A stretch of DNA of 64,000 nucleotides from Klebsormidium nitens (GCA_000708835.1 DF236997.1:217608-281607); one strand, 5' to 3'; positions 2,382 to 32,500 are shown, numbered from the stretch's first letter. Notes: generated by a model from the letters alone, not told the origin. Numbers and translations are program-made.

Positions 2382-5300
2382 ATGGCCGCACCAACTTGCG
2401 GCCTGAGGGCAGCGCTCTGTTTAGCGGTGGCATTGCTTCTTTCCTCCAATGCTGTGGCGACCAACATTTTGTTGTTTACAAGGCAGGCAGGGGAAAAGCA
2501 CGAGGCAGTGGTTGAGGCCATTACAGCTTTGACTGTTGAGGGTCTCAAGAGGGGGTGGACAGTGGTGGATTCAAACGATAGCTCGATATTCACGCCAGAC
2601 AAACTGCGAGGATATGATAGTGTTGTCTTCCTGCTCACAAGTGGGAATGTCCTTGAGCAAGCCGAACAGCGAGAGGCGCTGAAGGCGTACGTCAATGAGG
2701 GGGGTAGTTTCGTTGGTGTTCACTCCGCAGCGGACACTCTCGCAGACTGGGACTGGTTTGGGGAATTGCTGGGGGCACGGTATCTCAATAGCCCCTCTGA
2801 CAAGGATCAGCAGGCCACAGTCATCGTCAGTGACAGGTATTGCGCGCCTGCTGGTTGTCCAGATCTATATCAGCGCTTCATGTTGCATACTGGTTTGTAG
2901 TCCCTTTCTTGTGAGGTCCACGAGGTAGAGTCGTGCTTTTCGAGAGTACTTTCAAGCAGTCTGGCCAATCTACATGTTCAAGCTCAAGCTCTGTGGGGTC
3001 CCAGAGTGGTTCGCCATCATCGTTTCCCTGATTGAAACACTGAAGCTTTCTCTCTTTGCAAGTTTGCACCACCAGAGCTTCTTTAGAAAGCAATCAGTGA
3101 TCGCCTTTCTCTGAAATTGTCTGGCTAAGGCTGGTTCCGCTTCATGCTGGTTCAACTAGTTTTTACATGGTGCTTGAGCTGTCCTTAGACTCTGCCCGGT
3201 TATTTTTCTGGCCAATGACTGACGTCATACTACTGAAGGAGTGGTGTCACAATCACTGGTCTTGCTTTGGCATGTTACAGCAAAGGGGTGGTTCAGTCAC
3301 TTAACATACTTGACCAGTAATCTTAAGGTACCCCGTTGGAAAGGCACCAGCTTTGACGTTAAACACGTTCCTTGTGAGCCACGGCACTTTAAACAAGGCG
3401 CCAACTATGAAATGTTACTCTGAAATCTCTCTCAAGGTGAGCGCAATCTGCGCTTTTGCAGACAACATGTCGCAATCTATTACTATAGGGAAGGGCTATG
3501 AAGATAATTAATTGATCCTTCTACAACCAGTATTGAAACCACTGTCGCTCGTGTCTCAATCATTTTGAAGGTGAAAGCTGACTCCCATGACTCAACACCC
3601 TGCACATTTCAGGTCCGAAGTTGACCTATTCTTTCGAGCCAGCATTCACGACAAGCCGCCAAGAACTGAGGCTTGGTTTCCCGTGCAGATTTCACCCTGC
3701 GTCCGCAATTCTCCCGGAGCGGTGGTCTGTAGCAGATGAGTGGCTTACATTCGACCACAACCCGGTGGGGAAGGTCCACGTGCTCGCACATGTTGATGAG
3801 AAGACGTACTTCCGGGATCAGCCGGACGGCAGCATGCACTTTGATCACCCCATCGCCTGGACGCACCGGTGAGCAACTGTTTATCAAGTTTCCTTGAAAG
3901 CAGGATGTTGCAATTCTTTGGCCAATGGTGAAGAACCCATGGGGGATTGAGAGCAGTGTCCTGAAAGGCCAACAGTACTCATATCAGTCAATTACATCAT
4001 ACCAGTCAGTCAATGCCAGTGTCGCTTGCGCTGGTCTGTCACACACGTATGTATACTATTGACTTCATCAACGCCCACATGCATGCATGATAGGCAATTA
4101 TTTTCTGACTTGATTGATTGCAGAATCTGATATGTGTCTGCCTGATGATGAGTGATTGAATGTCAGGCCACTGGTTTGTTCTTGGGGCAGTGCCCCCCTG
4201 TCATCCTGGACATTTAGCCTGCAGCTCCACAAAATCAGCCAGTTGGGCCCAGTTGGGGTCCTTCTCCAGACGTTGAGATGCCATCCGAGTGCAACTGCCG
4301 TTACTTGAGTGCAATTTAGCACTGGGACAGGTGGTGCAGTGAAGAAGTTTACCGTGCGTGCCCCACAGGATGCAGGAGATGTACCCTGTTAATCAGAGGT
4401 TCAACTTTTGAAAGTTGTAGGTTGCCTTACCCTCAACAGGATGTTCCACATTACCTCCCTTCTCTCCATTTTTGTCTCCATTAAGATATGTTTGAAAGAT
4501 TGTGAAGAATTGAAGTCAGGAAGCTGATCTCCCCCTATTCACCTCTCTCGATACTCCCAACTCTACATCCTCTCGCTTGCTTGAATCTGAACTGTCAAAC
4601 CTTTCCTCTTGCAGGCCGCTCGCCTCTCGCGCTTTCTACACCGCCCTTGGCCATAGCTCGGTGGCCTGGGCAGACCCCTTGCTGGTGGATCATGTCATTG
4701 GGGGGATTGCCTGGGCTGCTCAAGCAGAGATGGCCCACCCCCCCAGTGCTGTGCGCGACACCCGTGCGCGCATATTGTGCGAGAAGCATGAGCAGGAAAT
4801 GCAAGCGCAGAAAAAGCAGAGGGAGAGCCGGTTCCTTGCCGAGGACGACGGCGCTGCGGGGCTTGACACCAGTTTCCAGAAGGACGCGCTCTACAGCTTC
4901 AATCAGGGCGAGCAGGTTGGTGCTGAGGGGCTTCAATTTTCAACTGTGCGCTCATGTTGGAAACTTCTACCAGCTTCATGTAGAGGATTGAAATTCATGT
5001 GTGTTCATTTACTTCCAGAGGTTGTTGCCTCCTCTGATTTTTGTGGTGCCTTGCGGTGCGCACCTTTTGTGATCTTTGATTGACAGCTAAGAATGTGGTG
5101 TTCTTTTGGGTGAACCAGGCAGTGGAATAAAGTAATCAGACTCAGTCAAAGGCAGAGTCAAGGAGACGAAGACTGGTTTATGTTGGACGTACGCCCCCAT
5201 CCTGTCAAGTAGGCACAGTACATTTGTTGTTCCGGTTTCGGTCCTCTGCTGGCCAAGAGCACCTTTTGATCGCAACATAGATGCCAACCTTGGCATCAGA

Positions 5301-8300
5301 TGACTGAACCTTGTGTCCTATCTGCAGCCCATGAATCTGGCTGTCCTCCCTGATGGACGCGTCCTCTTGGTTGTCCGCAACGGGGCCCTCCTGCTCTACA
5401 AACCGGATGTGAACACGGTCGTGCTGTGTAAGTCGTCTCTTCCTTGATAATCTGGTTTGATATACAAGCCCGACTCGGCCTTGAAGTCCTGCCAGAAGTC
5501 CTGCCAAGATGCTCAATTGGTTCTTTATTTTTCTCTTCTCCCGTTGGAATTCTGACATCCCTCTGCTTGTGTCCGGATGTTCAACGTTGTTCCGGTTTCC
5601 TTTGAGATCCGAGCTTGACATGAAAACACAGTGTGTAAAAGTCCGTGTGTAAGATTTCAAATGAATAACCTGGCCCTTTGCTATACGTTGTGATGTTTAG
5701 ATGTATGGTGAAAAGCGGCTCGCAGCCAGACGAGTCACTCAGAGAACTATCTGGACATCCGCCTTTTCGTAAGCAATCAGGAAAACGGGAGCCGGGAACC
5801 TCACCAACGAGGATGGGCGTCTTTAAGACGTTTGAACAAGCTTCGACGCACGTGGCTCCTTGTCCTGCGAAAATGTATCCGACTTTTCACCCTGGGAATG
5901 CTCCAGTGTAAGTGGCAGCTTTGTATGGCGAAGGATCTCCGACCATTTATTTTATGCCCTTCTCCCACAGGTGGTCGCTGGAACGTGACCAACAGCAACG
6001 AGGATGGGCTGCTGGGCGTGGCGGTGGACCCCAACTTCGCCAGCAACGGCTTCCTGTACGTCTATTACTCACCGATTGCGCTCGTCAATCCGACGCAAAA
6101 CGTGCTCTCGCGGTACACGATGCGTGGGGACGAGGTGGACCTTACGACTGAAGTACGCATGATCTCAATCAGGACCCAGGTGAGGACTGCTGGCCGGTTC
6201 CTCGGTGTCGTGTTCAAAAGCTGATTCGTTGGCTCGATTGGAGATGGTTGCACTGGCGGCCTTTGAAGGTCTTTACTTGGATCCCGGAACATTTTTTCTT
6301 TGCTTATGTAGCTTGTGTGATTGGGCTGGATAAGCGAATGGCTCGTTTATCCATTGCCCCTCAGTAAAACTCGTACCACCTTTCTCTGGTGGATTTTCCC
6401 GAGTGATCTGTGTAGTTTTCCACGCATGCGTGGTCAAGTCCAGTAGAGTGCGCGCCTGTGATTCGCCTGTCGGTTGGACAAACAACACCGAAAAGCGACA
6501 ATAGTCCGTTCCGCTCGGAGTACTGGGAGTACGTACGGACACCCTAGGAACAGCGGCTTCTGAATGAGGGCTCATGTTCGCTGCTTGTAGGGTTGATGTC
6601 GGTCGGCGTGATTAGCCGCGCTTCGGTTTAGTTGTCACTGTGTGAGTGGGGTCTCTTTCTGCGCACTGGAGGCGAAGCCTACCATCGGTTTGCAGTTCCT
6701 TGCACTTAGAAATTTGTCTCTTGTGCAGCGCCTGGCCTGCTGCCACAGCGGAGGCAATGTCAAGTTTGATACGGCCGGAAACCTCATCCTCAGCGTGGGG
6801 GACAATACCTACCAAATGTGAGCCGCTCCTAGCTGTCAGAAACTTCGTGCCTGTTGTTATTTTTGTTTGATTGTTGATGCCTGATCTTCGAATCTGAATC
6901 GGCGGTGCAAGCAGGCAGTGCATCTGCGTTCTGCATGGTGACTTGTTTGTATGGACGCGTCTCCAGGGTTTTCAGCCAACTCAGACACATACACTGCGGA
7001 AACAAAGCCTGTCGAAGTTCTGTAAAGTCAGCTCAGGGCCCCATAAGAGATAAAGTTCAAAATTACTTGTACTTTTGCGACTGGCTGGGGTAAGGATGCA
7101 CGGCTGCTAATCAGGAAGGAGGCGGCCCCTGTGCACGAAGAAGCCGAACTTGCGCGCCAGCCGCTCGTAGCTCGTTCTGAACCCAGGGTTGTATCCGTTC
7201 TGCTCGACAGAGGTTGGGCGCCCACGGATGTCCGCCCCGGCTTCTCAGTGATGGACTCCCAGAAGAGTGCGGCCAATACGAACGACCTGCGGGGGAAGCT
7301 GCTGCGCATCACGCCGAACGGCACCAACTATACCATCCCAGCAAACAACTTGTTCCAGGCAGATGCAACCCACAAGTAAGTCTCTGCTTTTGCTTCTACT
7401 TTTTGGTATTCAAATGACGGGCAAGTGGTTGATGGTGCTTCCTGCTGCTGGCTCAAAGTCGATCTTTACGCCTTCAAGGCAAAGTGACCCAGAGCAAAGT
7501 GACCTCAGACTTCTGCCCAGTTCTTGCCGGTGGGACTTGGACGGACTTCTGTGATGACGCATTTCTCCGTGCTGCCGTCCGTTTACAAACTCCTGAATAC
7601 GCGCCTCCTCTCTTGCTGCTTCTGCACAGTGGAAGCCTGTGCCGTCAGAAGATGAAGGACGAGTCTTGTTCCGCTGTTCGCACTGTCATTCACATTCCTG
7701 GACACGCCTTGTAATTGAAGGTTCTTGGTTCATCTACGTCCCACCAACAAAATAATGATACTTGCAAGTAGGAAGTTTGGAACTTAACTTGCCTTCTTCT
7801 CACCCGCAGGGGCGAGATCTACGCAATGGGCCTGCGCAATCCGTTCCGCTTTGCGGTGGACCCGCTAACCAACGACGTTTGGTGGGGGGAGATCGGGCCC
7901 GACGAGCTTGCCACCGACCCAACGAGGGGACCCATTGGCATGGACGAGATCAACAAGGTCAAGTACAACGACCCCGGGAATTACGGCTGGCCCTACTGCC
8001 TAGGGCCCAACATGCCGTACGTAAAGTTCGACTACGTCAAGCAAGCCACTCTGAATGTTCCGTACGATTGCGCAAACCCGGAGAACGACTCGCCCAATAA
8101 CACGGGGCAGAAGACAGGTGAGGCGAGCTGGGGTGGTCCAGAGGACGAGAATCGTTTACCTGCTAGTGCACTGCGCTAATAATGGATTCTAAATCTTGAG
8201 CAGCAGGCTATATACCAATGACAGCGTTCAAAACCCCTGCAGAATTGTAGGCGCCTCGTTTCCTGCAGTTAAAGCATTTTTTACGAAAGCTTCTAGATAC

Positions 8301-11300
8301 AGTCGTTTTTGCTGGGAGTGTATGCACCGCTTCTTGAGGCCTCAACATACCAAGCGCTTTCCTTCTCTCCCCATCTCTTGTCCCTGTCACTGTCTTCTTA
8401 TCCGCCCACCTTCTTCTGTGCCCCAGGGCTGCCCCCCTCGCGCGCGGCCATTGCGTACTACACCTACAACAACAGCACGGACTTCCCCCAGTTCAACCCG
8501 GACGACACGTCTAAAGTGCTGGGCCGCGCCGCCATCGCGCCCTTCTTCTACCGCTACGGCGTGAGCGTCAACGCGAGCGCGCCCTACGCCCTGCCGCAAT
8601 ACTATGACAACTCGCTCTTCTTCTTTGACTGGTTCCGGTGAGTCAAACAAAACCTGCTTTTGATTCAGAGTGGCTGATTGGTTTGGAAGTTTGGTCTCCC
8701 CAGTCTTTGTTCAATTTCATGCGGTAGCAATCATGGTGATCATGATCGTTTTTCAAATGTTCAGACTGCCTCAGACTTCCTCGCTGCATTACAAGTCTAG
8801 TGTAGATCTTGGTTTGTCACCTGTCTGAAAGCTTGTACTCAAGTAACTCTGTGTGAACACGACTGTTGTCTTCTTTCGGCCCTGTTACAAACGCAGCGTT
8901 CTGCTCCCTCTGCAGGGACTATGCGCGGCTGCTCAAGATGGACAGCAACGGCACGCTGCTGAGCATCACCAAGCTGTGGCCGACCTTCTCCTGGAAGTCC
9001 GTCATGGACATGGCGATCGCACCCGACGGCTCACTCTACATCATTGAGTTCGGGGACGGCTTCAACCTGATCGGCGCGCAGCTAAGCCGCATGCGCTACC
9101 TGGGCGCGCCAAACCCCATCAGTTGCCAGGTGGCAGCGACATCTACCTCGGGGCAGGCGCCGCTCACGGTCAAGTTCTCCACAGACGGCACCACGTCCAG
9201 GTGAGCGGCAAAGCGGGGGAACGAATGAATTTCTCGGTGAATGTTCGAGTGAATGTTCGAGTGAAGAGTTCGTGGTCGTTTGGGGCGCCTAGTCGGAGAA
9301 CCGGTGCTTCTGATGCTTCTGATGCAGTGGAATGTGCTTTGCGCCTATTTGTAACAGGGGGCTTGGGTCAATAACAAAAACCCAAAAACAAAAAGGGTCG
9401 CGAAAGTATAGATTATAGGGAGGACGACACGTCACGCATTTGCGAAGGCTGTTTTCAGAAGCGAACCGCAAAGATGCGGTTGAGCTGCTTCGAGTCATTA
9501 AACCTTTTCCCTAGCCCTTCAGGTCCCTGATAGTAGGTCTTGGCTTCTAAGCCTGACAATTCTCATTTGCAGCGACGGGCTTCCGCTGACGTACTTCTGG
9601 GACTTCACCTCCAACGGGACCGTCGGCGCCACCAGCGCGAACCCGACGCACACGTACATGCGAGAGGGCGTCGCGGTCGCGACGCTAACGCTCAAGTCGT
9701 CGAAAGCGACAAAGTCGTGCACGGTGCCCATCGACGTGGCGTCCAGCCTCAACAGCCCGCCGCAGGTCACAGTGGATTATCCGTTCGAGGGGGGCATCTA
9801 CACCTGGGGCGACGTGATCGACTTCTCGGTGAGCCTCCATTGACTTCGGTTCCGACCTTAGCTCCGTATCAAGACTCAGGATTGCATGTGAGAAGCGCTT
9901 TGATTTTTTACCGCTTCAGGGAATGCCGTGAAAATCGTATACATCTAGTCGGAAGCTTCGCTAGTGCCGTTGCTGAGGAGCAAACGCGACGTGCATCTTT
10001 ATCAACCTTCTTTCCTGCTTCGTCGAGGAGCGGATACAGATAGGCAGTCTTTAGCGGCCTCCTCCTGTACCCTGATGCGATTCTGGATGGGCGCAGATCC
10101 AAACGGTGGAACCTCTCAAAATCCTAGTGGTAAAATCCTGTTCATCTCACCCTTTCCTACTCCTGTTCATCTCACCCTTTCCTCCCCCCCCCTCCCCAGG
10201 TGTCGGTGATTGACAAGGAGGACGGCAGCACAGCGGACGGCGGCATCCCGTGCTCCAATCTGCAGGTGACACCTGGCCTGGGCCACTGCCCCGGCCGTCT
10301 GGCGCCCTGCCACGTGCACAACAGCATTGCCAACTACGCGTGCAACGGCACCTTCGGGCCAGTCGAGGACGAGCACTCGTGGGAGAAGTTCTACTACTTC
10401 GTGCAGGCGCTCTACCCCGACCGGTAAGCACCCACCGGAGGCGGTTTCTAGATTGCGGCCTTCGCGTCCATGAGCAGGTCCTCAGTTGGGAGACTTCCAT
10501 TGCGTTTCCACTTTCTGCCAGTGGTTTTCCGCGCGTTCAACGCTGTCTGGGCTTTGTATGTTACGCGCTCTTGTGTCCAATCTGAGGTCTCTTCTTCTTG
10601 TTCCCGCTTCGTGTCTGGCGCAAGCGGATGCCATGATTGTCTCGTGGTATCGTTCTGTATCGAGTCTTATTTGTCGACGGGGCTCCGTTTGTGGCCTGGG
10701 TTCTCTCAGCGGCAGAAGGAGCAACTACATGCGCTTGCAGTACTCAATAAAGTAAATCTTGAGAGGACCAGGTTTCTTGCCATTCGGTTTTGCCCTCGAA
10801 GCTGGGAACTTGCAACGTGTCAATCTCCGCATCCCCTTCGTCGACAATCTGACCGCAGTGTTTGCGTTTCTCTGGTGCAGCGGTGGTGCCAACGGCTCCG
10901 CCCCCATGATCGGGCTTACGTTTGCCCAGCTGAAGCCGTCCGTCTGGCAGTTGGAGTTCTTCGATGGCTCGGTAAGCACTGCTGCCATTTGCAACCCTGT
11001 CATCTGACATCATTCAGGAAAAGGGTGCACACCGTCTAAGCATGGTCTTCTTCACTGAAATCTGTGTCTACGCCGCGTTTTGTGGCGTGGCCAGAACAAA
11101 ATGCAAATGCATCGGGCCTTTCCAACTTGCAGTGGGCGGAGGTAAAAGGAGCCTTTGACATTGCCCTTGCATACCATATTCTCCTGGCTGTCTGTTTAGC
11201 CCATCTGCTAATGTGTCCCCTTCTACCCAATCTGCAGGTTGAAAGCCCCGTCTGCTGACGTGCCCTCTTGACTTCAAAGTTAGAGCGTAGGATGGACCCA

Positions 11301-13540
11301 ATTCCGGAGGAGTTCAAAGCCCCGTCTGCTGATGTGTCCTCTTGACTTGTTTCTAATCTGGACCCCATCTTGCAGAGTTCCAACGCCACGGGGGCTACCC
11401 AGACGACCAAGGACACGATCGGGGGTGGCCTGGACGTGTACGGGTTGAACGACGGCGACTGGCTGCGGTACGACAACTTCAACATGCTCAACATCGACAG
11501 CATCACCTTCCGGGGTTACAGGTATGGCCCCTTCTCTGCGATCGGCCAACGTCTGCTCTAATAACTTTGTCGTTGGAGGATGAGTTTGAAGCTGCACGGG
11601 GTTAGAGACGATCGCTGAAAGGCAGGAATCAAAATAGGTCGGTGGAGCGATCCTTTGAGCCCGAAAGAGACCGTGAAGAGCTTTGGTTTCGCTGACTCCA
11701 AAAGGCACTGCCTGCCCGGATCCGTGGAGATTCCGTCCCTAATACGTAGCTGAAGCTAGCGCCGAAGATTTATTCCCTCTTGACCATAGCTGCTCAGGCA
11801 TATTATATCAAGGCAGTGTCCCCTATGAGACACAACACGTGTTCCTGCTTCGATCCCCCTGTTACGGTCCCGCCGATTCCCTAGAGCCTCTGCTTACCTT
11901 TCTGCAGCGCCTCTGGCGGTGCGTTCATCGACGTGCGGATTGGGTCGCCAACCGGGCGCATCATCGCCACTGTGCCCATTGCTGCAACCGGGGCGGGAAC
12001 ATACACTGACTTCCAAGTGCCTATCCAGGACACCAACCAGTGGTTCATGGTAAGGCCGGACGGGCTTTAATCTGGGCTCTCGCATTGGCGTTGAAAGTGG
12101 CACAGGGTTTTGACCCATGTGCATCTTGTCGTAACGTATCCGCTTCGGCACGACTTATTTCGAGTCGCTGTTGCATTTGACCAATGAACCAACGGGCAGC
12201 TATGCAAGAACTGCTCGTCAATAAATCCTGACATTGTTTTCCGCTGTTTAGCAGCCATTCTTCGCGAAGCACCGAAATCAGCGGGCTTCCACCTCAGCAT
12301 CGGCAGCCTCCTTCCCGGAGATCCGCTTGCTTCTCGCAAATTGCTTCCCGTAAAGTTTAGAGACTCAACTCTGACTCCAAAGTTCCGTGCCCACGTGTAG
12401 GTGGACATGCAGTCCGCGTGGACCATCTCCTGGTTGCAGCTAGACCCCGGGCAGTGGGCGACCGACTACCTGCGGGGCTACGCCGTCTTTGCGTCGCTCG
12501 ACAACTCCACCTGGGGCACACCCATCATGCCTCTGGCCACGGTACGAACCACGCGTCCGAGCAAGAGTTTCGTCTCCTTGCTGGGGCTTTACAGGACGTT
12601 AGATGGTTCAAGAGGAAGAAAATCTTTTCGAAGGCATGCGGGGCATAAGAAGCCCTTGTTGAGCGTCTTCTTTCAGTGTTCTCATTCTTTGGACTGTGTC
12701 TTTCTATACAGTCTGGGACGCAATGGCAGTGTGGCTAGCAGAATTCAGTGACGTCTTGCATGGTCGTTGTTGTGGCAAGCACGCCGAGCAAGCACTGCTG
12801 AAGTGTGCCTTCTGGTTGTTCTGTGAAGTACTTCGAAGTGACAAGATGTCGAGGGGTGCCAAAAGCTTGAGCGCCTCATTGACTACGCCTCTTGGTCAAC
12901 TTCTTGTCGGTTGCTGCCTATGCTGACAGATCCAGTCAGGTTTTGTTTGACGTCAGGTGTCGATCCAGCAAACCGTCTCAATCGTGACAGTCATGTGGAT
13001 GATGGAAGATACGGCGTACAGGCGTTTCTGAAAGCAACGATCACTTGGACGCGTCCACAAGTTAATAGATTGCTTCGCTTCTGACAGGGTAACCCTCCGC
13101 CATACACTCTCACCAACGGGACTGTGGCGAAAAATTTCACGGGTGTCATCAACATCACGCTCAATCCCCCCGTCAGCGCCCGGTTCATCAAAATCATCAA
13201 CATCGGGCCCGCAGCCAATACGTCGTGGTGGTCAGTCGCCGAGTTGCGCGCATTTGATGACAAGAATGTGAGCCTAGGAACCGCAAAGTGGGTCGCAACA
13301 GCGTCGTCGCAAGCGTCGGACACGCCACCTCAGCAGGCTTTGGATGGCAACATAACGAGCCGGTGGGCCACCGGGGAGTCCCAACGGCCGGGGAATGTGA
13401 CCTTGTATACCACATTTAGATCGGCGGTTGCGGGCGCCAAGAATCTGTTCGTCCTAAATTATATGACCTTCAACGGTCAAGGAATAAGCACGACGCCCCA
13501 TGAGAAGGGAGTTCCGCCACCAGTCAGCACACAGTATTAG
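2382..13540 (+). CDS. Secreted multidomain protein: signal peptide + ThuA-like + PQQ-dependent glucose/sorbosone dehydrogenase (GSDH beta-propeller) + PKD + CBM6 with inserted permuted F5/8C (CBM32-like) module; 17 exons, ~1251 aa
   Basis: Exons 2382-2836, 3689-3868, 4615-4915, 5328-5427, 5971-6179, 6729-6817, 7211-7375, 7810-8117, 8427-8637, 8916-9200, 9573-9828, 10200-10423, 10881-10971, 11376-11521, 11908-12049, 12401-12541, 13088-13540. All are GT-AG and phase-consistent, totalling 3756 nt. Motifs: hydrophobic N-terminus; Thu[14 protein letters not shown]...[23 protein letters not shown]; [70 protein letters not shown]; PKD LTYFWDF...NPTHTY; CBM6 [10 protein letters not shown]...[10 protein letters not shown]. 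Confidence 0.92.
11226..11390 (+). repeat. Tandem ~70-bp duplication in intron 13 echoing the acceptor/exon-14 start
   Basis: aaagccccgtctgctga(c/t)gtg(c/t)cctcttgactt at 11242-11274 and 11316-11348. Each copy is preceded by a variant of the true acceptor context (acccaatctgcag.., gacccaattccggaggagttc.., true gaccccatcttgcag|agttcc). Confidence 0.7.
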
Positions 13541-14544
13541 AGTTCAAGACGTTGTATGAGGTCGTAATCTAGTCGTCGGTATATTCATTCAATTGACTTT
13601 GAAGTCCAGTGTTACCTTTGTTAGTACCTTTTGCCCCTGTAAAAGTAGGAGATAGAAACAGTTCGGAGTAGGTTTTGTAGGATTGTGAACTGAAAGAGTG
13701 TTGATCTTGTCAAATCTGATGGATTTTGCCCGACGCCAGCGCATTGCTTGGGATTTGCAAAAGGTCTGGTGGAGCTTGCAGGAAAAGCATAATACAGTCC
13801 GAGTCAGATCGAAGTACCCATTGTATCGCATGTTGCAAAGCCCTTCCGAACACTGAGGCTTCACAATCAATGCAGTGAAGATCAGGATTAGAAAGTAAAG
13901 TTTTGGCAAATCATCGACTTTGATTGTGCTGGCCCTCAAGCTTAGCTTGTGGCAGACGTACCAGCTTGGCTGATGCGCGCATCATCGACGCGCAAGCGGA
14001 AAATGCGGAAGACTGCGCGCTGCATGATGGCCTGTCATTCGCGCGCCGGCAGCTCTATACGCTGAAGCATCGACAGACTTACATGCAAGGGATGCACTTT
14101 ATTTCGCCGTTCATAGGCCGGCTGCACCTGGTGAGGGAGCTTATTCAATATGGAGCCTTACAACAAATCGCGCCGGCCAGAGCTTTGATAATTGTCCAAG
14201 CGGCATGCGCGCTGCTGTGCAGCTAGTTAGTGTACAACAAGTCGACAAGTCGGAAAGGGCCCGCGCACATACTGAAGCAGGGGCCGCGTGTTGCATAATC
14301 ATTTGTTGTATACAACGATTCGTAAAACGCGCAGACTTTTTATCGACGGCATACAGCCCTCCATGTCACGGTTGCAGGCCATCCGGCGCTTGCATGCACA
14401 GCAGCGATTGGCTGGATGAGTCGCGAGGCGATCCGAGCACCGCACAGTCTCGAGTGCTTTCATCAGTCTTTCCAGTGCCGTGAAACTGGTCGACGTCAGT
14501 GTCAGGTTGATATGCATTTGATCAACAGCAGTGTCCTGGCAAAT

Positions 14545-14801: not shown

Positions 14802-14946
14802 AGAGTCGCTGCATAATAGGTACTGCTGTCTTCGGAAGGCCTCCCAGCTGGAGTAGAGATTGTAGTCACTGTTGCACCACCCTTTCTTCTGCGTTAACTT
14901 CACTAAGGTTCCTTCTTGCGAAAAGCTTTCCTGGTCAACTTGAGCA

Positions 14947-17633
14947 ATGGCAGCCCAGAAGGGAGAACGGCAGCACACCGCCGCAGATCACCCAGTGGCG
15001 CCAGACTCCTCTGAGCAATATGAGATTGTTCTGTATGGAGCTCAGACTTGTCCCTTCAGTCAGCGCGCTAGAATAGCGGTCGATTCCAAGGGGCTCAAGT
15101 ACGAGTACAGAGAGACGGACCCATATGCTAAGCCGGAGGATCTGCTGGCGCACAACCCCAGGGGGGCGGTGCCGACGCTAGTGCACAATGGTGAGGGACA
15201 ATCAAACTCAGATCGACAGTGGTGTCAACGGAGTCCAACTTCTAGTTTGGTGCATGCATGAGATACAGCAGCTTTTATGACAATGTGCTACATGCGGTGG
15301 TCACAGCTTTGTGCAGTAGTTCGTGGATCGGTCTGGGTTCTTGTTTCTCAAATCAACGTAACCTTGAGTTTTGGGCGCTGCAGCTCGCTGGCTAAAATCT
15401 GCTTTTAATGCGCTGATATGAATTCCCCATTGATCTAAGTCATCTTTGTGGGGTAGCTGCTGCGATTGGTTTCAGTGGTGAAAGAGCTCTGGCGATCAGT
15501 ACCACAATCAAGAACAGCATTGCACCTTTCTGATGCTTAACTTCTGAAATGGTGGTCATATGTGGCCAGGCTGACTTTGAGTTGTAGCAATAGATTTGAG
15601 CTACTATAGTTTGTGGGTTGCCAAAACGAGACACATTCAGCGTAGAATTATAGAAACATAACAAAAAGTGGGGCGCCCGCGTGGATTTTGTCAATTTCGA
15701 GTCAGCTTAAATCTCCTGGAACATCAACAAGTCCGATTCTTTCTCGTGTATTGTTCAGCTTTGGTTTTCTTTCCACCACGTCAATGACCACCGTGTCCCT
15801 GCAAGCGTTGAAGTCTTGGATGCTTGAAAGCTGTATCAACTATTATCTGATCTCAAGCATTGAAGAGACATTCCAGGTCGCATTCGAGTCCAATGTCACG
15901 TATTACGAAAAGGCTATAGAGAGAAGCAGAAAATCAGCCTCTCCTTGTTTGGGCTCTCCTATTAAACTTCACATCTTTAATGTTCCTCAGGTAAGAGCGT
16001 GTACGAGTCGCTGGTGGTGGTGGAGTATGTGGACGAGGCTTGGCCAGGGGACGTGCACGGGCCGACTCTTCACTTCCTTCCGAAAAGGGACGTGCACCTA
16101 CGGGCCCTGGCCAGGATCTGGACGACATTCGTCCAGGTCAGCACCGGCGGTCCGAGCAGAGAGCTAGAATATGGCTCGGATTTAAATGAACTGTTTCAGG
16201 GCAAGGTTCAGAGAACCGTTTTAGGAATGGCTACCAGTCTCTGGTGGAAGGTCAATTGGTTTGTTCTCTTTCGAAGGTCTTCTGCGTTGTGAAGAGGTCA
16301 ATTCGGCCGGACGTGGTTTAAGGCGTCCCAGAGCACGGACTCATCGTTCAATTCTAATGGGCTTTGTTGGAAAGCACTAATTTCGGCTTGTCACATCGGT
16401 AAGCAGATACTCAGCTGTGCTCCTTTGAGGAGTGCACTTACAATCGAGACTCCAGCCCACCTTCTTGGAAATGGAAACCAAAATATGTGGAAGCCACTAA
16501 AAGCCCAGGACCAGAATGCTGAAAGCCCAGGAAAAGCACGGGACCTAAGTTTAAGGAAACTGTCGTCGCTGCCTCTCCTTCTGCCCTGAAGGCCAAGTTT
16601 GCATCATCGTCAACCAGTCATAGTGGCAACATGTTTCTCTCCTTTGTAACGAAGGACGAATATAGTTATAGTTCGTCGTCATGTGCCGCAAACTCCATTC
16701 CGGCCGACCGCTTACCTCAGGTCAATTGGGGGGCACTTGATTCGGAACAACTTCGAAGTCACTTAACCAGCGACACTGAACGCGAACTTCAGAAAGGTTT
16801 TTGGCTCCGCCTTTTGGCTTTTCCTGTGTTACCAGCTCACGGAGATCTCCGCCTCCTTGTTGCAGGATAAGCTGGTGCGCGGTTTCTTCGACTTGTTAGC
16901 AGCTCAAGACGAGTCGGAGCAGGAAGCTCTGAAGACGAAGCTGCTCGACAGTCTGAGAGAGTGGACGAAAGCGGCCGCTGAGATCCAGTCGAGCCCAGCA
17001 TCGGGGCCGTTTTTCATGGGCGAGCACTTTGGGATTGTAGACATCGCCTTCCTGCCCTTCGCTGTGAGGTACGAAGTGGGCTTGGCGAACTGCCGTTACT
17101 TGATTTTGAACTGAGGGACGAAAATGCGAGAGACTCTACGGGGGGAAAGAGAGCGGGGAAATGGCAATGCTTTGGTAAGCCGCTGTGGGATTTTGGTTGA
17201 AGGTTAGGGCTGTCGGATTGACTGCTGATGTGATGGTGATGTCGGGAGGCGGCATGTCTCTGAGAGCTCTCGTCAGCACCCGCCCGGACAATCGGTTCTC
17301 ATTCTCACGGCTCAGCAACTGTCATTCCTGGCTCACTTGATGGCATTACGAATCCACAGATTTTTCGCTTTAGCCTAAAGGTGGCTCCACTGAAGGAGCC
17401 GCTCTTCGACCTTGTTTGACAATCTGCGTGACCGCACACTCTGCAGATTCCCGGCCCTCGAACACTACCGAGGGTTCACAGTGCCGGACACCGACGAGTT
17501 TGCAGTCTACCACACATGGTTGAAAGCAGCGAGCGCGTTGCCCAGTGTTCAGTCAGCTATGCCCTCCGAAAAGGAAGTGATCGACTTCTATTCGAAGTAC
17601 GCCAAACGTGACGCCACGTGGAGAGAGCCATAG
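14947..17633 (+). CDS. Glutathione S-transferase, Cys-active-site (omega/lambda-like CPFS motif), 4 exons, 259 aa
   Basis: Exons 14947-15190, 15991-16136, 16866-17068, 17447-17633 (780 nt). Motifs [59 protein letters not shown]. Confidence 0.92.
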
Positions 17634-26003: not shown

Positions 26004-26168
26004 NNNNNNNNNNNNNNNNNNNNNNNNNNNNNNNNNNNNNNNNNNNNNNNNNNNNNNNNNNNNNNNNNNNNNNNNNNNNNNNNNNNNNNNNNNNNNNNNN
26101 NNNNNNNNNNNNNNNNNNNNNNNNNNNNNNNNNNNNNNNNNNNNNNNNNNNNNNNNNNNNNNNNNNNN
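26004..26168. other. Assembly gap (N run)
   Basis: 165 consecutive N just upstream of SecA1. Confidence 0.99.
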
Positions 26169-26533
26169 CATGGGCTCGCCTGAGTTGTGAAGGACTCCAG
26201 GTTCCGCCATTCGACGGCTGAGAATTTAACTTCAACACACGATGCTTTGGAGGTTGCTGTTCTTTGTGTAACGCGTGGCATCTGCAGAGGGAGCCGCGTC
26301 TCTCCCAATCACAGTCGAGCAAACTGCTGACCTGTCACATTGTGGATGCGAGCTAGTTGCCCAGGCCTTCTTCCTTTGCTGCTCGCAGGGAAACGCTGCG
26401 CAGCATTGCCGTTGGCGTTGCCGGCGTTGGCTGTTGCGCACCAAGTAGCGCTACCTACATAATACTAACAGTAGGGGGGTGCGTATTGCTCTTTTGTGTC
26501 TCCTAAACCTGCACTTAGAGTAAACCTAGCAAA

Positions 26534-29500
26534 ATGTCGATCGCAGGTGGAGCGACGGCGCTCGGCGCTAAGGCCACGTTTGTGAATCCCGCGTCCCTTG
26601 TAAACAGCGCTGCTTCCAACCACTTGGCCCACACACCTGCTGCGGCGGCCCTGCCCCATGCCCTTACACGCACAAACAGTCTCGGGTCCGGTTCTTTGTT
26701 TGCAAGCCTGTCTCTGGATGGCTCTCCGAGCAGCTCGTACTCCGGCCAGAAGCTCAGCGGAGCGACTCAAAAAGAAATAAAGCAAAGTCGGAAGAGGCAG
26801 GGTGGCGCGCTGAATACGACCGCAGCATTCGGCAACGTCTTGGGAGGCTTGTTTGGGGGTTCAAAGGGCGACGATGGGTCAGCGACAGCGAAAAAGTATG
26901 CGTCAAATGTTGAGAAAATCAACGGGCTTGAGGCGAGAATGCAGGCGCTGAGCGACGAGGAGTTGCGGCAATGGACAACGGAACTGCAGCGGAGGGTCCG
27001 GGGCGGGGAAAGTTTAGATATTGTGCTGCCCGTGGCATTCGCAGTGGTTAGGGAAGCGTCTAAGCGGGTGCTGGGGCTCCGGCCTTTTGACGTGCAACTG
27101 ATTGGTGAGTCGGCGCATCTGCTCTTTCAAATGGGCTGCCCACCTTAATTCGAGAATTGAAGCAGCCCTAAAAGCCCTAAAAGTGGCCCTTGCTGAATGA
27201 CATTGGGTTCCTTAGAATAAGGGCGGAGCGGTTTCAGAAAGTTCTTCCTGAGTCCTGTATATGGACGTTTTTAGACATTGGTCACATTGTTCTTTGCCTC
27301 TGCAAAATCTGTGGCAAGGTAGTGTTGTTTCCGAAGTGGGTAGGTCAGCCGTCATTAGGTGGCCATATTGTGGTGGCATACTTTCGAACTTTCTTAAAAG
27401 TCCACGTTCAGGTTCAGCGGATAGGATTGATAAAACTTTTGCAAGACTAGTGTCGGTCGAAAATGTCGTCCACCAAGTCAAGCACTTCGGCTAGCACCAT
27501 GCATAATCCTCTCTGCGTGAATGGGGAAATGATTTTGTCTGATGTCGGGCCGATTTCAGAGGGCGGTTTGGTACGCGCCATCTGCTCGCACATAAATGTC
27601 TCGCAAACAGTCATCAATGTTCCTATGCCAGGTGGTATGGTGTTGCACAAGGGCGAGATTGCGGAGATGCGGACGGGGGAGGGCAAGACGTTGGTGGCCG
27701 TGCTGCCCGCGTTTCTGAACGCACTGTCTGGAAAGAGCGTGCACGTTGTCACGGTCAATGATTATCTGGCACGGCGTGATTGCGAGTGGGTGGGCCAGGT
27801 GCACCGCTTCCTGGGCCTCAAGGTGCGTGCCCGCTGTAGAGGATATCCTTCTTTGTTCGTTCGCTGTGTTTTGTTGGCGCCTGACTGCAGTTTGAAGCAG
27901 CGGTGAGGACGCTTTGCTGTTGTTGAGATCCAGGCAATTACGGCATTCGACTGTCAAACTTTGTGTTTAGTAGGAGTGCGTTCGGTCGCAAGCAGCCGGG
28001 CGGAATTCCCTATGGTCTGGGCTACGTTTCTTCACTCAGCAAGGGGCAGGTCTCTTGAATCTTATGGGTCAGGAGAGATCAAGGAAGTAACAGAGCACTC
28101 CATGCTCTTAGATACAACTTGAAAGAGCATATAAAAGTACAAGCATTGGACTCGTGCTAAGGGTATAGTTCTGTTGGATATTGTGAAAGGCTGGTGAAGG
28201 CTGGTGTGATGCTTGTTTCCCTGGGCAGCTTGTTGCCCAAGTCCGACTACTGCTTTGAGGGCTATTTCGTGCCTCACCCGAAACTGTCAATTCCTTCACC
28301 GAATACTGCCATATTTGCCATATCAGAAAACCCGTTTTTAAAGCATGCTTTGCAAGCGTTTTGACCGCAATAGTACCACAAGGCCATCCTCCAACTTGTG
28401 CATCTTTTGTGTGCTGAATTTCAAAGGTCTATATTACAGCTTTCTTTTCACCCCTGGCGTATCCCTGCTCCAGTAATGACTTTGTCACAACTTTGGGGAG
28501 TCAAGAGTTCCGTCAGCGGTTGGTTCGGCATCATTATATTTTTAAAGGTTCTCTGTTACAACAGGCAGAGACCAAGATGGTTAGAAGAAAGGCAAAGCGA
28601 AAGGAGGGCTCAATGGGAGGGCATGTTCCGACGCTTTCTCATTTCTTTCTGCAGGTGGGCCTCATCCAAGCTGGCATGACCTCCGAGCAGCGGCGGGAGA
28701 GCTACGCCGCTGACATCACATATGTGACCAATAGCGAGCTTGGGTTTGACTATCTTAGGGACAACATTGCAGGGGTGAGCATCTCGTTGAGTGGTTGGGA
28801 TTGAGTGTTTTGACATACTCGGAAAAGGTCTGACAGAAAGCTGTTATTGGATAGACGGAAATGTTCTGTGCACGCTTTGGAATATTGAAGACGCTTTTGC
28901 CAGACTGGAAGTAGAGCTATCTGTTGGTGCATCTGCTTTTCCGCCAGTTCATGTCTTGGCTTGTAATGGTACAGTGCGGCTCTGCTGCCCAAACGTCTGA
29001 CCTTGGCTTACGTCTCTCTTAACCAACACCTTTCCAGCTTACACAACGGATTCTCCTCATAACACCTTTCTTGACTGTCTGTCGACCTCGGCCTTCGTTC
29101 TACTATCCTGAAAGTCCCCTCTGCACGGACTTGCGTCCTCATGTTCTTCCTCCCTGAATCACACTCTTCTTGCCTAATTTCCCCCACCTCGCTCGTTGCT
29201 TCAGGCGAGAGAGGACCTAGTGCTGCAGCGCGAGTTCAGCTACTGTATCATTGACGAGGTCGACTCCATTCTCATCGACGAGGCGCGCACGCCGCTCATC
29301 ATCTCCGGGGAGAGCGACAAGCCGGGGAAGAAGTACGAGATGGCCGCAAAGATTGCATCCATTTTCGAGCGGGACTTCCATTACACCGTCGACGAGAAGG
29401 CCAAGTCGGTCGTGCTCCAGGAGAAGGGCTACGAAGACGCGGAGGCAGCGCTTGCGGTGAGTATCTGTTTGCTTATCAAGACAGGGACAGTCCGACAAGA

Positions 29501-32500
29501 GGTTTGCAGAAATTTGGATGACACATGGGATTGGTTGCGGTAGCCTTCCGCTTCAGTGGATTGTTAGGGAGTTGGAGAGGCGGTAGCAAATCGGCGTTTA
29601 AATGCTGGGTTTTCTTGATCAACACCTGGGCTGTAGGAAACGCCGAATCTCCTCGGGTGATTGGGGTTCCTGACGTCTTCCACAAACGAGCTCCTGTCGG
29701 GAAGACGACAACAGTTGTCAGGTTTGCCCCAATCAACGACACAGCATCCAGACATGACGCGGAGAGTGTTTGAGAAAACAGACGTCATCTAATCTCACTC
29801 TTTGTGCTTCATGCGGCAAAATGGGCACAACAAAATTCCTGCAAGCGTCTGCACGCAGTCCGGACAAGAGCCTTCTCATTCCTCTTTCTCAGGTCAAGGA
29901 CCTTTACGACCCGCGCGAGCAGTGGGCGTCGTACATTCTGAATGCGATCAAGGCCAAGGAGCTGTTCCTGCGGGACGTCAACTACATCGTGAAGAACGGC
30001 GAGATCTACATTGTAGACGAGTTCACCGGCAGAGTCATGGAGGTACGTGGCAAGTCTGCGTCGCTCAGCGAAGACAAGACATCAGATGTTTTCTTGAAGA
30101 AGAAGAATGCCTTGATACGACAGTATTTTCCCCGTCGAAGAATGACGGGGTTCAGGAGACTGAGTGGAAAGCCGGTACATGTGTCGAGTTCAAAGCGGGG
30201 CAATCAAGGAATTCAAGGGCAGAGTTTTTAGCAATGTAGCATACCAAGGCACCGCCGAAGTAACCTGAGCCCGGAATGTGCCTGAGTTTTCAATTAAGAC
30301 ACTTATAGGAATTATATAGAGATGAACATGAAAAATAGACTGACCGAATTAGTATACACGATATCGTTAGTATTCTCTGCTCTCCGCCTGTCAAACGATG
30401 CGGACCTGTGTCGGAGGGCTATGATTGCATTTCTAAGCATCGGTCACTGATGCTTGTGACTGCAGGGACGGGTCAAAGCTTCCGCCAGTGGGCTTGGTTG
30501 CTTCATCAGACAACTGCACCTCAGCTTCCTTCACACCCTGCACAGGCAGCCTACATCACAAGTCTTAGCTGCGGATTAGCTTCGAGAAGGCTCAGTTCTA
30601 ATCCGTCTCCCGTCTGTACAGGGTCGGCGGTGGAGCGAGGGGCTGCACCAGGCGGTGGAGGCGAAGGAGGGGCTGGAGGTGCGCAACGAGACGGTGACGC
30701 TGGCGAGCATCAGCTACCAGAACTTCTTCCTGCAGTACCCCAAGATCTGCGGCATGACCGGCACCGCCGCCACTGAGGCCAACGAGTTCAAGAACATCTA
30801 CAAGCTCGACGTCACGTGCATCCCCACCAATCGGCCCATGGTCAGAAAGGTGAGGCGCGGCGCGGGAGACGCTCCGGGGGGAGTGGAAAAGTGGCCCCAC
30901 AAACGCTTTATCGCCGCTTTCTCTTTGACTGCTCTCCTCACGGCCAAGTTTGTTTTTCCCCTTGATGTGAATTTTCCATGCAGGTTCCTTTCAGTAATGC
31001 ACGTCAGCTGATCGTGGCAATCGGTTTTGCTTGTCATCCTGGAAGGATACTCAACAGGATTTTCCGCAGAGTAGGATACCCATCTAGTCAACTACTTAAC
31101 GCCCCCCGCTCCGTAACTTTCACCTCAACGTCTCATGAACCTCCTTTGAAGATTGCTACTACACCCGCGGTCACTGACAGCAAGTCAGACATGGGCGTCG
31201 TTAACCCCTTCACTAAACCTCTCCCTTATCCCTCTCGAAACCTGTTTTCAGGACGAGAGCGACGTGGTGTTCCGTAGCGTGGACGGCAAGTGGCGCGCTG
31301 CGGTGGTGGAGGTTGTGCGCATCCACAAGCAGGGCCGCCCCGTGCTGGTCGGCACCACCTCCGTCGAACAGTCGGAGCTCATCTCGGAGAAGCTCACAGA
31401 GGCCGGCATTAAGCACTCGGTACGTTTCCTTGCGGCATCTTCCCTTGAATTGAGCCTTTGGGGCAGTTTTCTTGCTTCAGTGTAAGTTTTGAGATAACAT
31501 GCTGATCGAGCAATCGGAGCTCATCTTCGAGAAGCTCACAGAGGCCGGCATCAAGCACTCGGTGCGCTTACCGTCGGCTCTCTACCTGACTTCGATGTTC
31601 TTCTTTGGCAGCTCGTTTTTTAATCAACAAGTTGACCTACTCCCTTCGTGAATGAGAACCTTGTCCGGTTATTATGTTGACGGTAGGTCTAGAGACGCGC
31701 ACTCTCGACGGCAAAGCAGCCATAACCTGATGTGACGCCCAAGCGCTAGATCTCCTCCACTCAGAACGTTACTCAATTATGCAGAAACTATCCTTATGCA
31801 CAGATATCAGTCAAAAGCAAATGTGACGAAGCCCGGAGCAAGGTCGAAATGCTGCAGCTGTATCGGGTCTCTAATCAAATGCCCGCTGAAACATGCTCTT
31901 CTTTCCTGCCAGCTCTTGAACGCCAAGCCCGAGAACGTGGAGCGCGAGGCCGAAATTGTGGCGCAAAGTGGTCGGCGAGGCGCGGTCACGATTGCGACCA
32001 ACATGGCAGGGCGAGGGACGGATATCATTCTGGGGGGGAACGCAGAGTACATGGCCAAGCTGAAGCTGAGGGAGGTCCTCATGCCCAAGTGAGCAAACCG
32101 AACAACATGCGATTATTGGCGGTTGAATCGAGGCGAAAGGCAGTTTATGTGGCTGCTTTCTGAGGCCTCGTTTTGGCTCGAAATGAGCTGTTGGACCGCC
32201 TTCAACAGGTCCATGTACTTCTGAGAAATTTGTCGGAAAGATGTAAGACAGTTGATTTCGATTCTTAGAAAGAGACGCTCTTTCTGGATTGTTTAAGTAA
32301 GACTAGAAGAGACGTGCGGAACTGATCGTGTTGACGCGTGCAGGGTGGTGCGGATAAACGACGAGGAGCTGCCCAATCTGCGGGGCAAGAGGATGATCAT
32401 CCGGTCGTGGCGGGTGAGCAGGCCGAGTTCACAATTTCAAACACGAGAGTTCTGTTTGAAAATTCATTGGGTTTTAAAAATCCAATGGTTTGCTCAGTCA

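What the first reader, a model, noticed from the sequence alone, without database searches (positions are those of the whole stretch)
2382..13540. Bacterial-type ThuA-GSDH-PKD-CBM6 secreted enzyme naturalised in an algal/plant genome with 16 spliceosomal introns
Seen: one phase-consistent 17-exon ORF with a signal peptide and four domains, on a scaffold shared with bona fide plant genes, so it is not bacterial contamination. Established: ThuA + PQQ sugar dehydrogenase + PKD + CBM6 combinations with the motifs CCHxGG, [12 protein letters not shown] and EIYAMGxRNPFR are typical of Actinobacteria/Bacteroidetes, and differ from the plant HIPL1/HHIP GSDH proteins. Inference: horizontal acquisition followed by massive intron gain, giving an extracellular carbohydrate-binding oxidoreductase acting at the cell wall or mucilage.
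Basis: partly seen in the sequence, partly recalled or inferred. Interest (0 to 1): 0.82.

Follow-up and report, generated by a model that had tools for sequence, protein, structure and literature searches.

The report
Bacterial-type secreted sugar enzyme gene in alga
A green alga carries and expresses a 17-exon gene for a large secreted, sugar-chain-binding enzyme of a kind otherwise found in intron-less bacterial-type genomes, so it is a well-supported old gene transfer that later gained 16 introns; what the enzyme does is still untested.

Summary
Window 2382-13540 (+) is one gene of 17 exons and 16 GT..AG introns, giving one open 1251-codon frame. Ten of the 16 junctions appear in spliced contigs of four runs from four studies. 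The other six rest on splice consensus, phase, tiling on bacterial homologues and conservation in a second alga.

The protein has a signal peptide, ThuA, a GSDH-type six-bladed propeller, PKD, a conserved linker and CBM6.

All close full-length relatives are intron-less and sit in compact contigs. At least 598 bacterial genome stretches of seven or more phyla encode relatives. Intron-bearing copies turned up only in two other algal contig sets.

In an ML tree the algal pair is sister (100/99) to P0042. P0042 alone shares the nested discoidin-in-CBM6, so the odd module was inherited, not invented by the alga. P0042's contig looks more like a giant virus than a bacterium, so the route is open.

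Transfer plus intron gain is supported. Catalysis, PQQ use and substrate are inferred only.

The scan found this before on other DNA: finding s1-299407 describes a paralogue elsewhere in this genome. Earlier notes call the genome Klebsormidium nitens; I did not verify that.

The parts
2382..13540 (+). Whole coding gene: 17 exons, 16 GT..AG introns, 1251 codons plus stop. The transcript reaches at least 13749 (3' UTR) and starts about 138 nt upstream of the ATG.
2382..2459 (+). Predicted signal peptide of 26 residues: a basic start, a hydrophobic core, and A-V-A before the cut.
   Evidence: Read from the sequence. No predictor was run. Bacterial homologues also begin with signal peptides.
2460..4717 (+). 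ThuA-like domain spread over exons 1-3 (Pfam profile positions 1-121, 114-174, 179-209).
   Evidence: PDB relative 4jqs
4718..4915 (+). Charged linker at the end of exon 3, longer than in the bacterial homologues.
5328..9105 (+). GSDH-type six-bladed propeller over exons 4-10. It holds CCHSGG (6738-6755), [12 protein letters not shown] (7275-7310), [12 protein letters not shown] (7814-7849), and the DEIN and GNYGWP motifs in exon 8.
9106..9732 (+). PKD domain (end of exon 10 plus exon 11).
   Evidence: PKD_4 at 29.4 bits, PKD at 22.9 bits
9733..10423 (+). Conserved Cys/His-rich spacer domain without a Pfam family (end of exon 11 plus exon 12). It aligns to bacterial HMM positions 776-868.
10881..12049 (+). 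CBM6, first part (exons 13-15; Pfam CBM_6 profile positions 9-91).
12401..13396 (+). Circularly permuted discoidin (F5/8 type C, CBM32-like) module nested inside the CBM6. Exon 16 matches profile positions 40-79. Exon 17 holds the C-terminal part, followed by the N-terminal part (profile 2-34).
   Evidence: The same order occurs in P0042. The P0042 model has pLDDT 83-97 over this module and gives CBM32/discoidin fold hits.
13397..13489 (+). Last strands of the CBM6, resuming after the insert. They align to the CBM6 ends of bacterial homologues (HMM 990-1022).
13490..13540 (+). Short Pro-rich C-terminal tail and stop codon. No hydrophobic anchor is present.

Best explanation
This is a real, expressed nuclear gene of a green (streptophyte) alga. 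Its ancestor was an intron-less gene of the bacterial ThuA-GSDH-PKD-CBM6 family. It entered the algal lineage once, before the split of at least two algal copies that now share 59% protein identity. It then acquired 16 spliceosomal introns, host-like codon composition and many N-glycosylation sequons.

Shown: the exon structure, the splicing, the domain order, the nearest relatives, and the sharing of intron positions with a second alga.

Inferred mechanism: the signal peptide sends the protein into the secretory pathway and out of the cell. The CBM6 with its nested discoidin module holds it on a glycan of the wall, mucilage or neighbouring organisms. The propeller oxidises a sugar or sugar-chain end with a quinone cofactor, using the conserved histidine as base. 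The cofactor is probably PQQ, which the alga would have to obtain from bacteria. The ThuA domain assists in an unknown way, by analogy with ThuAB, which forms 3-keto-disaccharides. The algal protein has no cytochrome domain, so the electron acceptor is unknown.
For: Gene reality and splicing. Eukaryotic setting. Each exon, aligned on its own, tiles a bacterial HMM from 24 to 1022 without overlap.

Nearest relatives: exon 8 against 1.84 billion representatives gave one 64% cluster of algal exon fragments. Below it were proteins of up to 60% identity, and those I inspected are intron-less. The 120 best profile hits are bacterial wherever they are named. At least 598 stretches in GTDB genomes encode relatives.

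Tree (IQ-TREE, LG+C20): window plus L001 100/100; plus P0042 100/99; plus P0002 96/93. FastTree on 118 rows gives the same placement. P0042 shares the nested discoidin-in-CBM6, a character that was not among the tree's columns.

Introns: 14 of 15 donors and 12 acceptors sit at the same codon and phase in L001. Coding GC3 is 78% against 49% GC in introns. There are 1.77 sequons per 100 aa against 0.2-0.8 in intron-less relatives.

Catalytic motifs: the His of CCHSGG aligns to sGDH His144, and the RN of RNPFR to Arg228/Asn229. DEIN and GNYGWP are kept. Bacteroidota relatives carry a cytochrome c domain, which fits a redox role for the family. On ThuAB: PMC8121099. A eukaryotic enzyme that uses PQQ made by prokaryotes has a precedent in fungal AA12: PMC4332668, PMC6881810.
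Against: No outgroup was available, so 'nested in bacteria' rests on distribution rather than on a rooted tree. I could not survey annotated eukaryotic proteomes with the full-length protein, so wider occurrence in other streptophyte algae is not excluded. No annotated protein of this alga appeared in any search. The nearest relative, P0042, may be viral rather than bacterial. The Arg in the last propeller blade, present in most bacterial homologues (RP[IM]D), is Lys-Ser here and Leu-Ser in L001. The His of the Asd-type EHGP motif is absent from the whole family. PQQ binding is therefore unproven. No activity, localisation or protein-level data exist. Six junctions were not seen in RNA.
Confidence: 0.8

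Rival explanations
1. A giant virus carried the gene. Either a Nucleocytoviricota virus took it from a bacterium and passed it to the algal lineage, or the virus captured a spliced algal copy. P0042 would then be a viral gene, not the bacterial donor.
For: P0042's contig L087 has compact genes on both strands, A-rich stretches before each ATG and no Shine-Dalgarno sequence. Six of its eight neighbouring genes are ORFans in Pfam and NCBIfam. Its PARG-like neighbour has Catovirus as its only organism-named relative, at 41%. Closer or similar relatives lie on contigs with TTL, collagen-like, ankyrin, RCC1, papain-like and Erv1/Alr genes. Others lie in GVMAG giant-virus bins of IMG/VR.
Against: No hallmark virus gene lies on L087 itself. 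The ThuA-GSDH family was not found in IMG/VR. Bacteroidota also lack Shine-Dalgarno sequences, which I state from general knowledge. GC of 44% is high for most Imitervirales. No other L087 gene matches the virus-like contigs. The next sister, P0002, sits in a 69% GC bacterial contig beside gloB.
Confidence: 0.25
2. The protein is secreted and binds glycans but is not an enzyme. The propeller would serve as a binding or scaffold domain, as in HHIP-type proteins, with no PQQ.
For: Eukaryotes do not make PQQ (PMC6881810). One Arg of the last blade is lost in both algal copies. HHIP is a non-catalytic relative of the fold.
Against: The catalytic His and the RN, DEIN and GNYGWP motifs are all retained in both algal copies despite only 59% overall identity. 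Fungal AA12 shows that eukaryotes can use scavenged PQQ.
Confidence: 0.25
3. The gene is an old, vertically inherited eukaryotic gene, and bacteria obtained it from eukaryotes or share it by common descent.
For: With a single eukaryotic clade, an unrooted tree cannot exclude a root on the algal stem.
Against: Hundreds of bacterial species in seven or more phyla carry it in many domain variants. Eukaryotic copies were seen only as three closely allied algal contig sets. The algal pair is sister to one tip, not to the whole family.
Confidence: 0.04
4. Bacterial contamination or an assembly chimera.
For: None beyond the bacterial look of the protein.
Against: Sixteen spliceosomal introns are removed in RNA contigs from four studies. 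Intron-split GST lies 1.4 kb downstream, and SecA and MPP lie on the same window. Coding composition resembles that of the neighbouring genes.
Confidence: 0.01

Closest known systems
P0042, an unnamed 1432-aa protein on Logan contig ERR12814418_63314
   Same: ThuA, GSDH, PKD, spacer and CBM6 in the same order, with the same permuted discoidin nested in the CBM6. It is 42% identical over 897 aligned columns and is sister to the algal clade in the tree.
   Different: It has no introns and carries an extra Malectin domain plus a second CBM6-like C-terminal end. It lacks the CCH motif. Its contig is of uncertain (possibly giant-virus) origin.
Bacterial 'ThuA domain-containing / carbohydrate-binding' proteins, e.g. 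Jiangella WP_092623322.1 (P0007), Rhodothermales MAG HEX7071587.1 (P0011), P0005 and P0003
   Same: The same colinear ThuA-GSDH-PKD-spacer-CBM6 core at 39-42% identity, with the NTNDLRGK and EIYAMGxRNPFR motifs. P0005 and P0011 also have CCHSGG.
   Different: They have no introns and no nested discoidin. Many add Por_Secre_tail, PA14, a cytochrome c domain or extra PKD/CBM copies. None has been characterised in the papers I searched.
Soluble quinoprotein (PQQ) glucose or aldose dehydrogenases: sGDH 1c9u, Asd/YliI 2g8s, 2ism, 3a9g
   Same: Six-bladed propeller family. The His144, Arg228/Asn229 and DEIN/GNYGWP equivalents are conserved.
   Different: Identity is only about 25-30%. The C-terminal PQQ-binding residues are not confirmed, and these are single-domain proteins. 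The roles of the residues are stated from general knowledge of sGDH.
Fungal AA12 PQQ-dependent pyranose dehydrogenase (CcPDH, TrAA12)
   Same: A secreted eukaryotic propeller enzyme that uses PQQ made by prokaryotes and is often joined to a carbohydrate-binding module (PMC4332668, PMC6881810).
   Different: A different branch of the fold. It has a cytochrome b (AA8) partner, no ThuA domain, and a CBM1 rather than CBM6. No sequence match was seen here.
ThuAB of Sinorhizobium and Agrobacterium
   Same: It contains a ThuA domain that works with an oxidoreductase on sugars, forming 3-keto-disaccharides (PMC8121099).
   Different: There the partner is a separate Gfo/Idh/MocA protein, ThuB. Here the ThuA domain is fused to a GSDH propeller.
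Paralogous 17-exon gene on another piece of the same genome (scan finding s1-299407)
   Same: By that note, it has the same architecture, the same exon number and the same transfer reading.
   Different: It lies at a different locus. I did not see its sequence.

Membership tests
ThuA (PF06283) | A match to the Pfam profile over its whole length, above the gathering score. | tested here: met
   Exon 1 scores 91.7 bits (profile 1-121), exon 2 scores 44.2 bits (114-174) and exon 3 scores 28.5 bits (179-209). The cut-off is 33.4 bits. Only separate exons were scored.
GSDH / soluble PQQ sugar dehydrogenase (PF07995) | Homology to the six-bladed propeller family. | tested here: met
   Exon 5 scores 30.8 bits against a cut-off of 25, and exon 8 scores 24.2 bits. 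Exons 4-10 tile the propeller of homologues that score 104-128 bits. PDB relatives are 2ism, 3a9g and 1c9u.
GSDH / soluble PQQ sugar dehydrogenase (PF07995) | The catalytic histidine (sGDH His144). | tested here: met
   The His of CCHSGG (6744-6746) is the column that aligns to His144 of 1c9u, via P0005, which has the same motif.
GSDH / soluble PQQ sugar dehydrogenase (PF07995) | PQQ and Ca contacts in blades 3-4 (Arg228, Asn229, Glu253/Tyr263 region). | tested here: met
   The RN of GLRNPFR, plus DEIN and GNYGWP, are conserved.
GSDH / soluble PQQ sugar dehydrogenase (PF07995) | C-terminal PQQ-binding Arg/Lys residues, and actual PQQ binding. | tested here: inconclusive
   The Arg of RP[IM]D in most bacterial homologues is Lys-Ser here and Leu-Ser in L001. 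Its equivalence to the sGDH residues was not established. Cofactor binding cannot be tested with these tools.
PKD domain (PF18911 / PF00801) | A Pfam match above the cut-off. | tested here: met
   Exon 11 gives PKD_4 at 29.4 bits (cut-off 27) and PKD at 22.9 bits (cut-off 23.5). The first third of the domain lies in exon 10.
CBM6 (PF03422) | A complete beta-sandwich matching the profile from end to end. | tested here: inconclusive
   Exons 14 and 15 match profile positions 9-49 and 58-91, at 22.0 and 20.9 bits (cut-off 28.9). The last strands follow about 150 residues later and align to bacterial CBM6 ends. The CBM6 parts of the P0042 model have low confidence, pLDDT 45-76.
F5/8 type C, discoidin, CBM32 (PF00754) | The Pfam match and fold in the standard strand order. 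| tested here: not met
   The order is permuted. Profile positions 40-127 come first and 2-34 come after. The fold itself is supported by the P0042 model (pLDDT 83-97) and by CBM32 hits that cover only about 80 columns.
Gene acquired by horizontal transfer from an intron-less donor | Nearest relatives lie outside eukaryotes, distribution in eukaryotes is narrow, and the gene is integrated in host DNA. | tested here: met
   The eukaryote survey was limited to what the protein libraries returned.
Gene acquired by horizontal transfer from an intron-less donor | A rooted tree that places the eukaryotic clade inside the donor group. | not tested
   No outgroup was available. The tree is unrooted.

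The most novel reading that the evidence does not exclude
The closest relative of the algal gene is encoded by a giant virus, and it is the only other protein found with the discoidin-in-CBM6 version of this enzyme. If so, a bacterial secreted glycan oxidoreductase moved between bacteria, a Nucleocytoviricota virus and the Klebsormidium lineage. The alga then keeps a PQQ-type enzyme that depends on a cofactor supplied by its bacterial neighbours.
Probability: 0.2. Interest if true: 0.75.

Novelty: new member of a known kind. Interest (0 to 1): 0.5.

Why it matters
Bacterial genes in streptophyte algae are a known theme in the story of how plants took to land. This is an unusually clean and large example: five domain types in 1251 residues, with all 16 introns necessarily gained after arrival. 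At least 14 of them were already in place before two algal copies diverged to 59% identity, so it is a useful case for studying intron gain.

If the propeller is active, it would be a quinoprotein-type sugar oxidoreductase in the plant lineage that relies on a cofactor made only by prokaryotes, as fungal AA12 enzymes do. The bacterial family is very common, with thousands of members, and none was characterised in the papers I searched. The nested, permuted discoidin-in-CBM6 works as a rare shared marker that ties the algal genes to one particular relative. The possibly viral home of that relative gives a testable route for the transfer.

Tried and rejected
- **Annotated protein of the alga.** An exact look-up of the exon 1 ORF found nothing on record.
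- **Profile search.** Five bacterial rows plus exon rows (A1) returned only bacterial proteins in its 120 best hits.
- **Region search.** P0042:960-1190 returned generic discoidin proteins, with no algal protein and no second ThuA-GSDH carrying the nested module.
- **Alga-weighted profiles.** Alignments A2, A4 and A5 were badly misaligned by MAFFT and were not used.
- **Metagenome scan with exon 8.** It found only two distant, intron-less relatives.
- **Viral-contig scans.** P0042, P0336 and A3 all found nothing.
- **Single-sequence AlphaFold model of P0042:895-1195.** It was useless, with pLDDT 37.
- **tRNA and Rfam scans of the window.** Both were empty.
- **Mimivirus-type AAAATTGA motif in L087.** It is not enriched: 31 matches against 22 expected.
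- **Paper searches.** Searches for ThuA with algae, Klebsormidium, PQQ or CBM6 found nothing on this protein type.
- **ESM Atlas.** It only confirmed GSDH-like features for exon 8.
- **Earlier findings by sequence.** The look-up was blank.


Full report
**1. What is there**

The + strand from 2382 to 13540 holds stop-free segments whose translations look like pieces of one bacterial-type protein. Splice-site and phase analysis gives a single chain of 17 exons; the coordinates are listed under the observation check. All 16 introns are GT..AG and measure 278-852 nt. The joined coding sequence is 3756 nt with one stop, at its end, which makes 1251 codons. I joined the exons only inside scripts, to test the frame and to build an alignment row. 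The joined protein went to no search or folding tool.

**2. Expression and splicing**

Twenty public runs from seven studies hold 40-50% of the sampled words of 7100-9300. That is roughly the exon share of that stretch. I laid four runs from four studies on 7750-13749. Single contigs of 3.3-4.1 kb skip nine intervals whose ends are GT..AG, and these are exactly the predicted introns 8 to 16. That set includes the 91-nt exon 13, which has no Pfam hit.

The loose end before 7802 equals 7338-7367. The contig then continues with the last eight bases of exon 7, which the aligner had placed on the look-alike last eight bases of intron 7 (7802-7809). So the E7/E8 junction is also seen.

The X7 contig has 1629 nt upstream of that point. 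That fits exons 1-7 (1499 nt) plus about 138 nt of leader. Low-depth unspliced contigs also occur, at depth 5-29 against 700.

The six 5' junctions were not seen directly, because only one 6-kb lay was available. They rest on four lines of indirect evidence:
- canonical splice sites and phase;
- colinear tblastn with homologues;
- gap-free tiling of a bacterial HMM;
- conserved splice signals in a second alga.

**3. Setting**

The window also carries intron-split genes for a GST (about 14944-17630 +), SecA (about 26500-35000 +) and an M16 processing peptidase (52796-53386 -). Coding GC3 of the gene is 78%, against 49% GC in its introns. Neighbouring exons have GC3 of 64-73%. This is host DNA, not contamination. 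Earlier scan notes name the genome Klebsormidium nitens. I did not verify the name, because run organisms were coded.

**4. Anatomy**

Exon-wise Pfam scans and separate hmmalign of each exon to an HMM of nine bacterial full-length proteins give this order:

| Part | Exons | Note |
|---|---|---|
| Signal peptide | 1 | judged by eye |
| ThuA | 1-3 | |
| Charged linker | 3 | |
| GSDH propeller | 4-10 | |
| PKD | 10-11 | |
| Conserved spacer domain | 11-12 | no Pfam family |
| CBM6 | 13-15 | first part |

Exon 16 and the first 103 residues of exon 17 do not match the bacterial HMM at all. The last strands of the CBM6 resume at 13397, aligning to HMM 990-1022.

The inserted piece matches F5_F8_type_C in permuted order. 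Profile positions 40-79 lie in exon 16. The rest of the C-terminal part comes next, and profile positions 2-34 come last.

**5. Relatives**

An exhaustive HMMER scan of 1.84 billion cluster representatives with exon 8 gave 1225 hits. The best was a 64% cluster of 99-162-residue fragments. One member lies on a 77-kb metagenome contig (L001) that carries the whole gene split by introns. A second member lies on Logan contigs L154-156, which are 81-83% identical in DNA to L001.

Every other relative whose contig I inspected is an uninterrupted ORF in a compact contig. These are P0002, P0003, P0005, P0006, P0007, P0008 and P0011. Their settings include Jiangella, a Rhodothermales MAG, ESX/T7SS neighbours and Por_Secre_tail.

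A profile search returned 7372 hits, and the 120 best are bacterial wherever named. The 80 kept belong to Actinomycetota, Bacteroidota, Rhodothermota, Balneolota, Gemmatimonadota, Planctomycetota and Bacillota.

No annotated protein of the alga itself surfaced in any search.

**6. Tree**

I made a composite alignment row from the separately aligned exons, for the window and for L001. I analysed it with 116 intron-less proteins in FastTree, and with a diverse set of 42 in IQ-TREE (LG+C20 PMSF, 1004 columns).
- The two algal rows are 59% identical to each other and 39-42% identical to the best others.
- They form a clade at 100/100.
- That clade is sister to P0042 at 100/99.
- P0002 joins next at 96/93.

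The tree is unrooted. The direction of transfer follows from distribution, not from topology.

**7. A shared rare character**

P0042 is 1432 aa and sits on contig L087. Its Pfam hits are CBM_6 profile 1-98 at residues 910-1008 and F5_F8_type_C profile 23-126 at 991-1102. The N-terminal discoidin piece follows, and then a segment that aligns to the algal CBM6 tail.

So P0042 has the same nested, permuted module, at 43% identity to exon 17. None of the 120 best family members has a discoidin domain. These columns were not part of the tree, so this is independent support for the sister relation. It also shows that the odd module was inherited rather than made in the alga.

A 57-row AlphaFold model of P0042:889-1195 gives pLDDT 83-97 across the whole inserted module. 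Foldseek finds CBM32/discoidin structures that align over only about 80 columns, as expected for a permutant. The CBM6 parts are poorly modelled.

Units in the same register tile tandem discoidin arrays of bacterial GH5 proteins. That fits an origin of the permutant from such an array.

**8. Introns**

I projected the window's exon ends onto L001. This finds AG|...|GT at the same codon and phase for 14 of 15 donors and 12 acceptors. Two further acceptors are shifted by one codon. Most introns were therefore in place before the two copies diverged. The donor type has none, so all 16 are gains.

**9. Where the nearest relative lives**

L087 is not clearly bacterial:
- Its genes are compact and lie on both strands.
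- Each ATG is preceded by an A-rich run without a Shine-Dalgarno sequence.
- Six of its eight neighbouring genes have no family.
- Its PARG-like gene has Catovirus as its only organism-named relative.
- The closest relatives of that gene lie on contigs with TTL, collagen-like, ankyrin, RCC1, papain-like protease and Erv1/Alr genes, and in GVMAG bins.

Against a viral origin:
- No hallmark virus gene is on L087.
- The enzyme family is absent from IMG/VR.
- No other L087 gene matches those contigs.

I rate a giant-virus origin of L087 at roughly even odds. I rate a virus-linked route for the algal gene at about one in four to five.

**10. Function**

Alignment through P0005 puts the His of CCHSGG on sGDH His144, and the RN of RNPFR on Arg228/Asn229. 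DEIN and GNYGWP are kept. The roles of these residues are from general knowledge of sGDH.

An Arg of the last blade that most bacterial homologues keep is lost in both algae.

Some Bacteroidota relatives end in a cytochrome c domain. This fits a redox role. The algal protein has none.

ThuAB forms 3-keto-disaccharides (PMC8121099). Fungal AA12 enzymes show that a secreted eukaryotic enzyme can run on prokaryote-made PQQ (PMC4332668, PMC6881810).

The gene has 22 N-glycosylation sequons, 2-9 times the density of its intron-less relatives. This fits passage through the secretory pathway.

The working model is a secreted, glycan-anchored sugar oxidoreductase. It is inference throughout.

**11. 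Verdict**

The scan already holds a followed-up finding of a paralogue (s1-299407) with the same reading, so this is a second locus of a known case.

New here:
- the splice-level confirmation for this locus;
- the shared intron positions with a second alga;
- the identification of P0042 as sister carrying the same nested module;
- the possibility that P0042 is viral.

Noticed in passing
L087:1-10534 (Logan ERR12814418_63314): The contig that carries P0042, the nearest relative of the algal gene, looks more like a giant virus than a bacterium. Most of its genes are ORFans, an A-rich run precedes each ATG, and its PARG-like gene has its closest kin on giant-virus-like contigs and in GVMAG bins.
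   Followed up: partly
L001:9642-9893 and L001:11153-11801: The introns of the second alga's copy hold degenerate partial duplicates of exon 8 (two) and exon 9 (three). The exon 11 equivalent needs a -1 frame change at L001:15218. This copy may be decaying, or the metagenome assembly may be imperfect.
   Followed up: no
window 2382-13540, coding part: There are 22 N-x-S/T sequons, or 1.77 per 100 residues, against 0.2-0.8 in six intron-less relatives. This may be an adaptation to the eukaryotic secretory pathway, or a side effect of composition.
   Followed up: partly
P0277:21-247, P0291:1408-1589, P0302:537-718 and similar: Bacterial GH5/discoidin-array proteins contain a CBM6-like start followed by discoidin units in the same permuted register as the algal insert. 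Some, such as P0281:871-1016, also have part of the CBM6-like tail. The nested design may therefore be a recurring bacterial module.
   Followed up: partly
window 10535-10909, 10942-11404, 12022-12429, 12513-13116: Low-depth contigs (5-29 against about 700) in run X1 run from exons into introns. They are unspliced precursor RNA or traces of DNA in the libraries.
   Followed up: no
window 14944-17630 (+): An intron-split glutathione S-transferase gene starts about 1.4 kb downstream of the stop codon. Its N and C domains lie on separate exons.
   Followed up: partly
window 26004-26168 and 47386-47405: Two runs of N (165 and 20 bases) are assembly gaps. The first lies just upstream of the SecA gene.
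   Followed up: no
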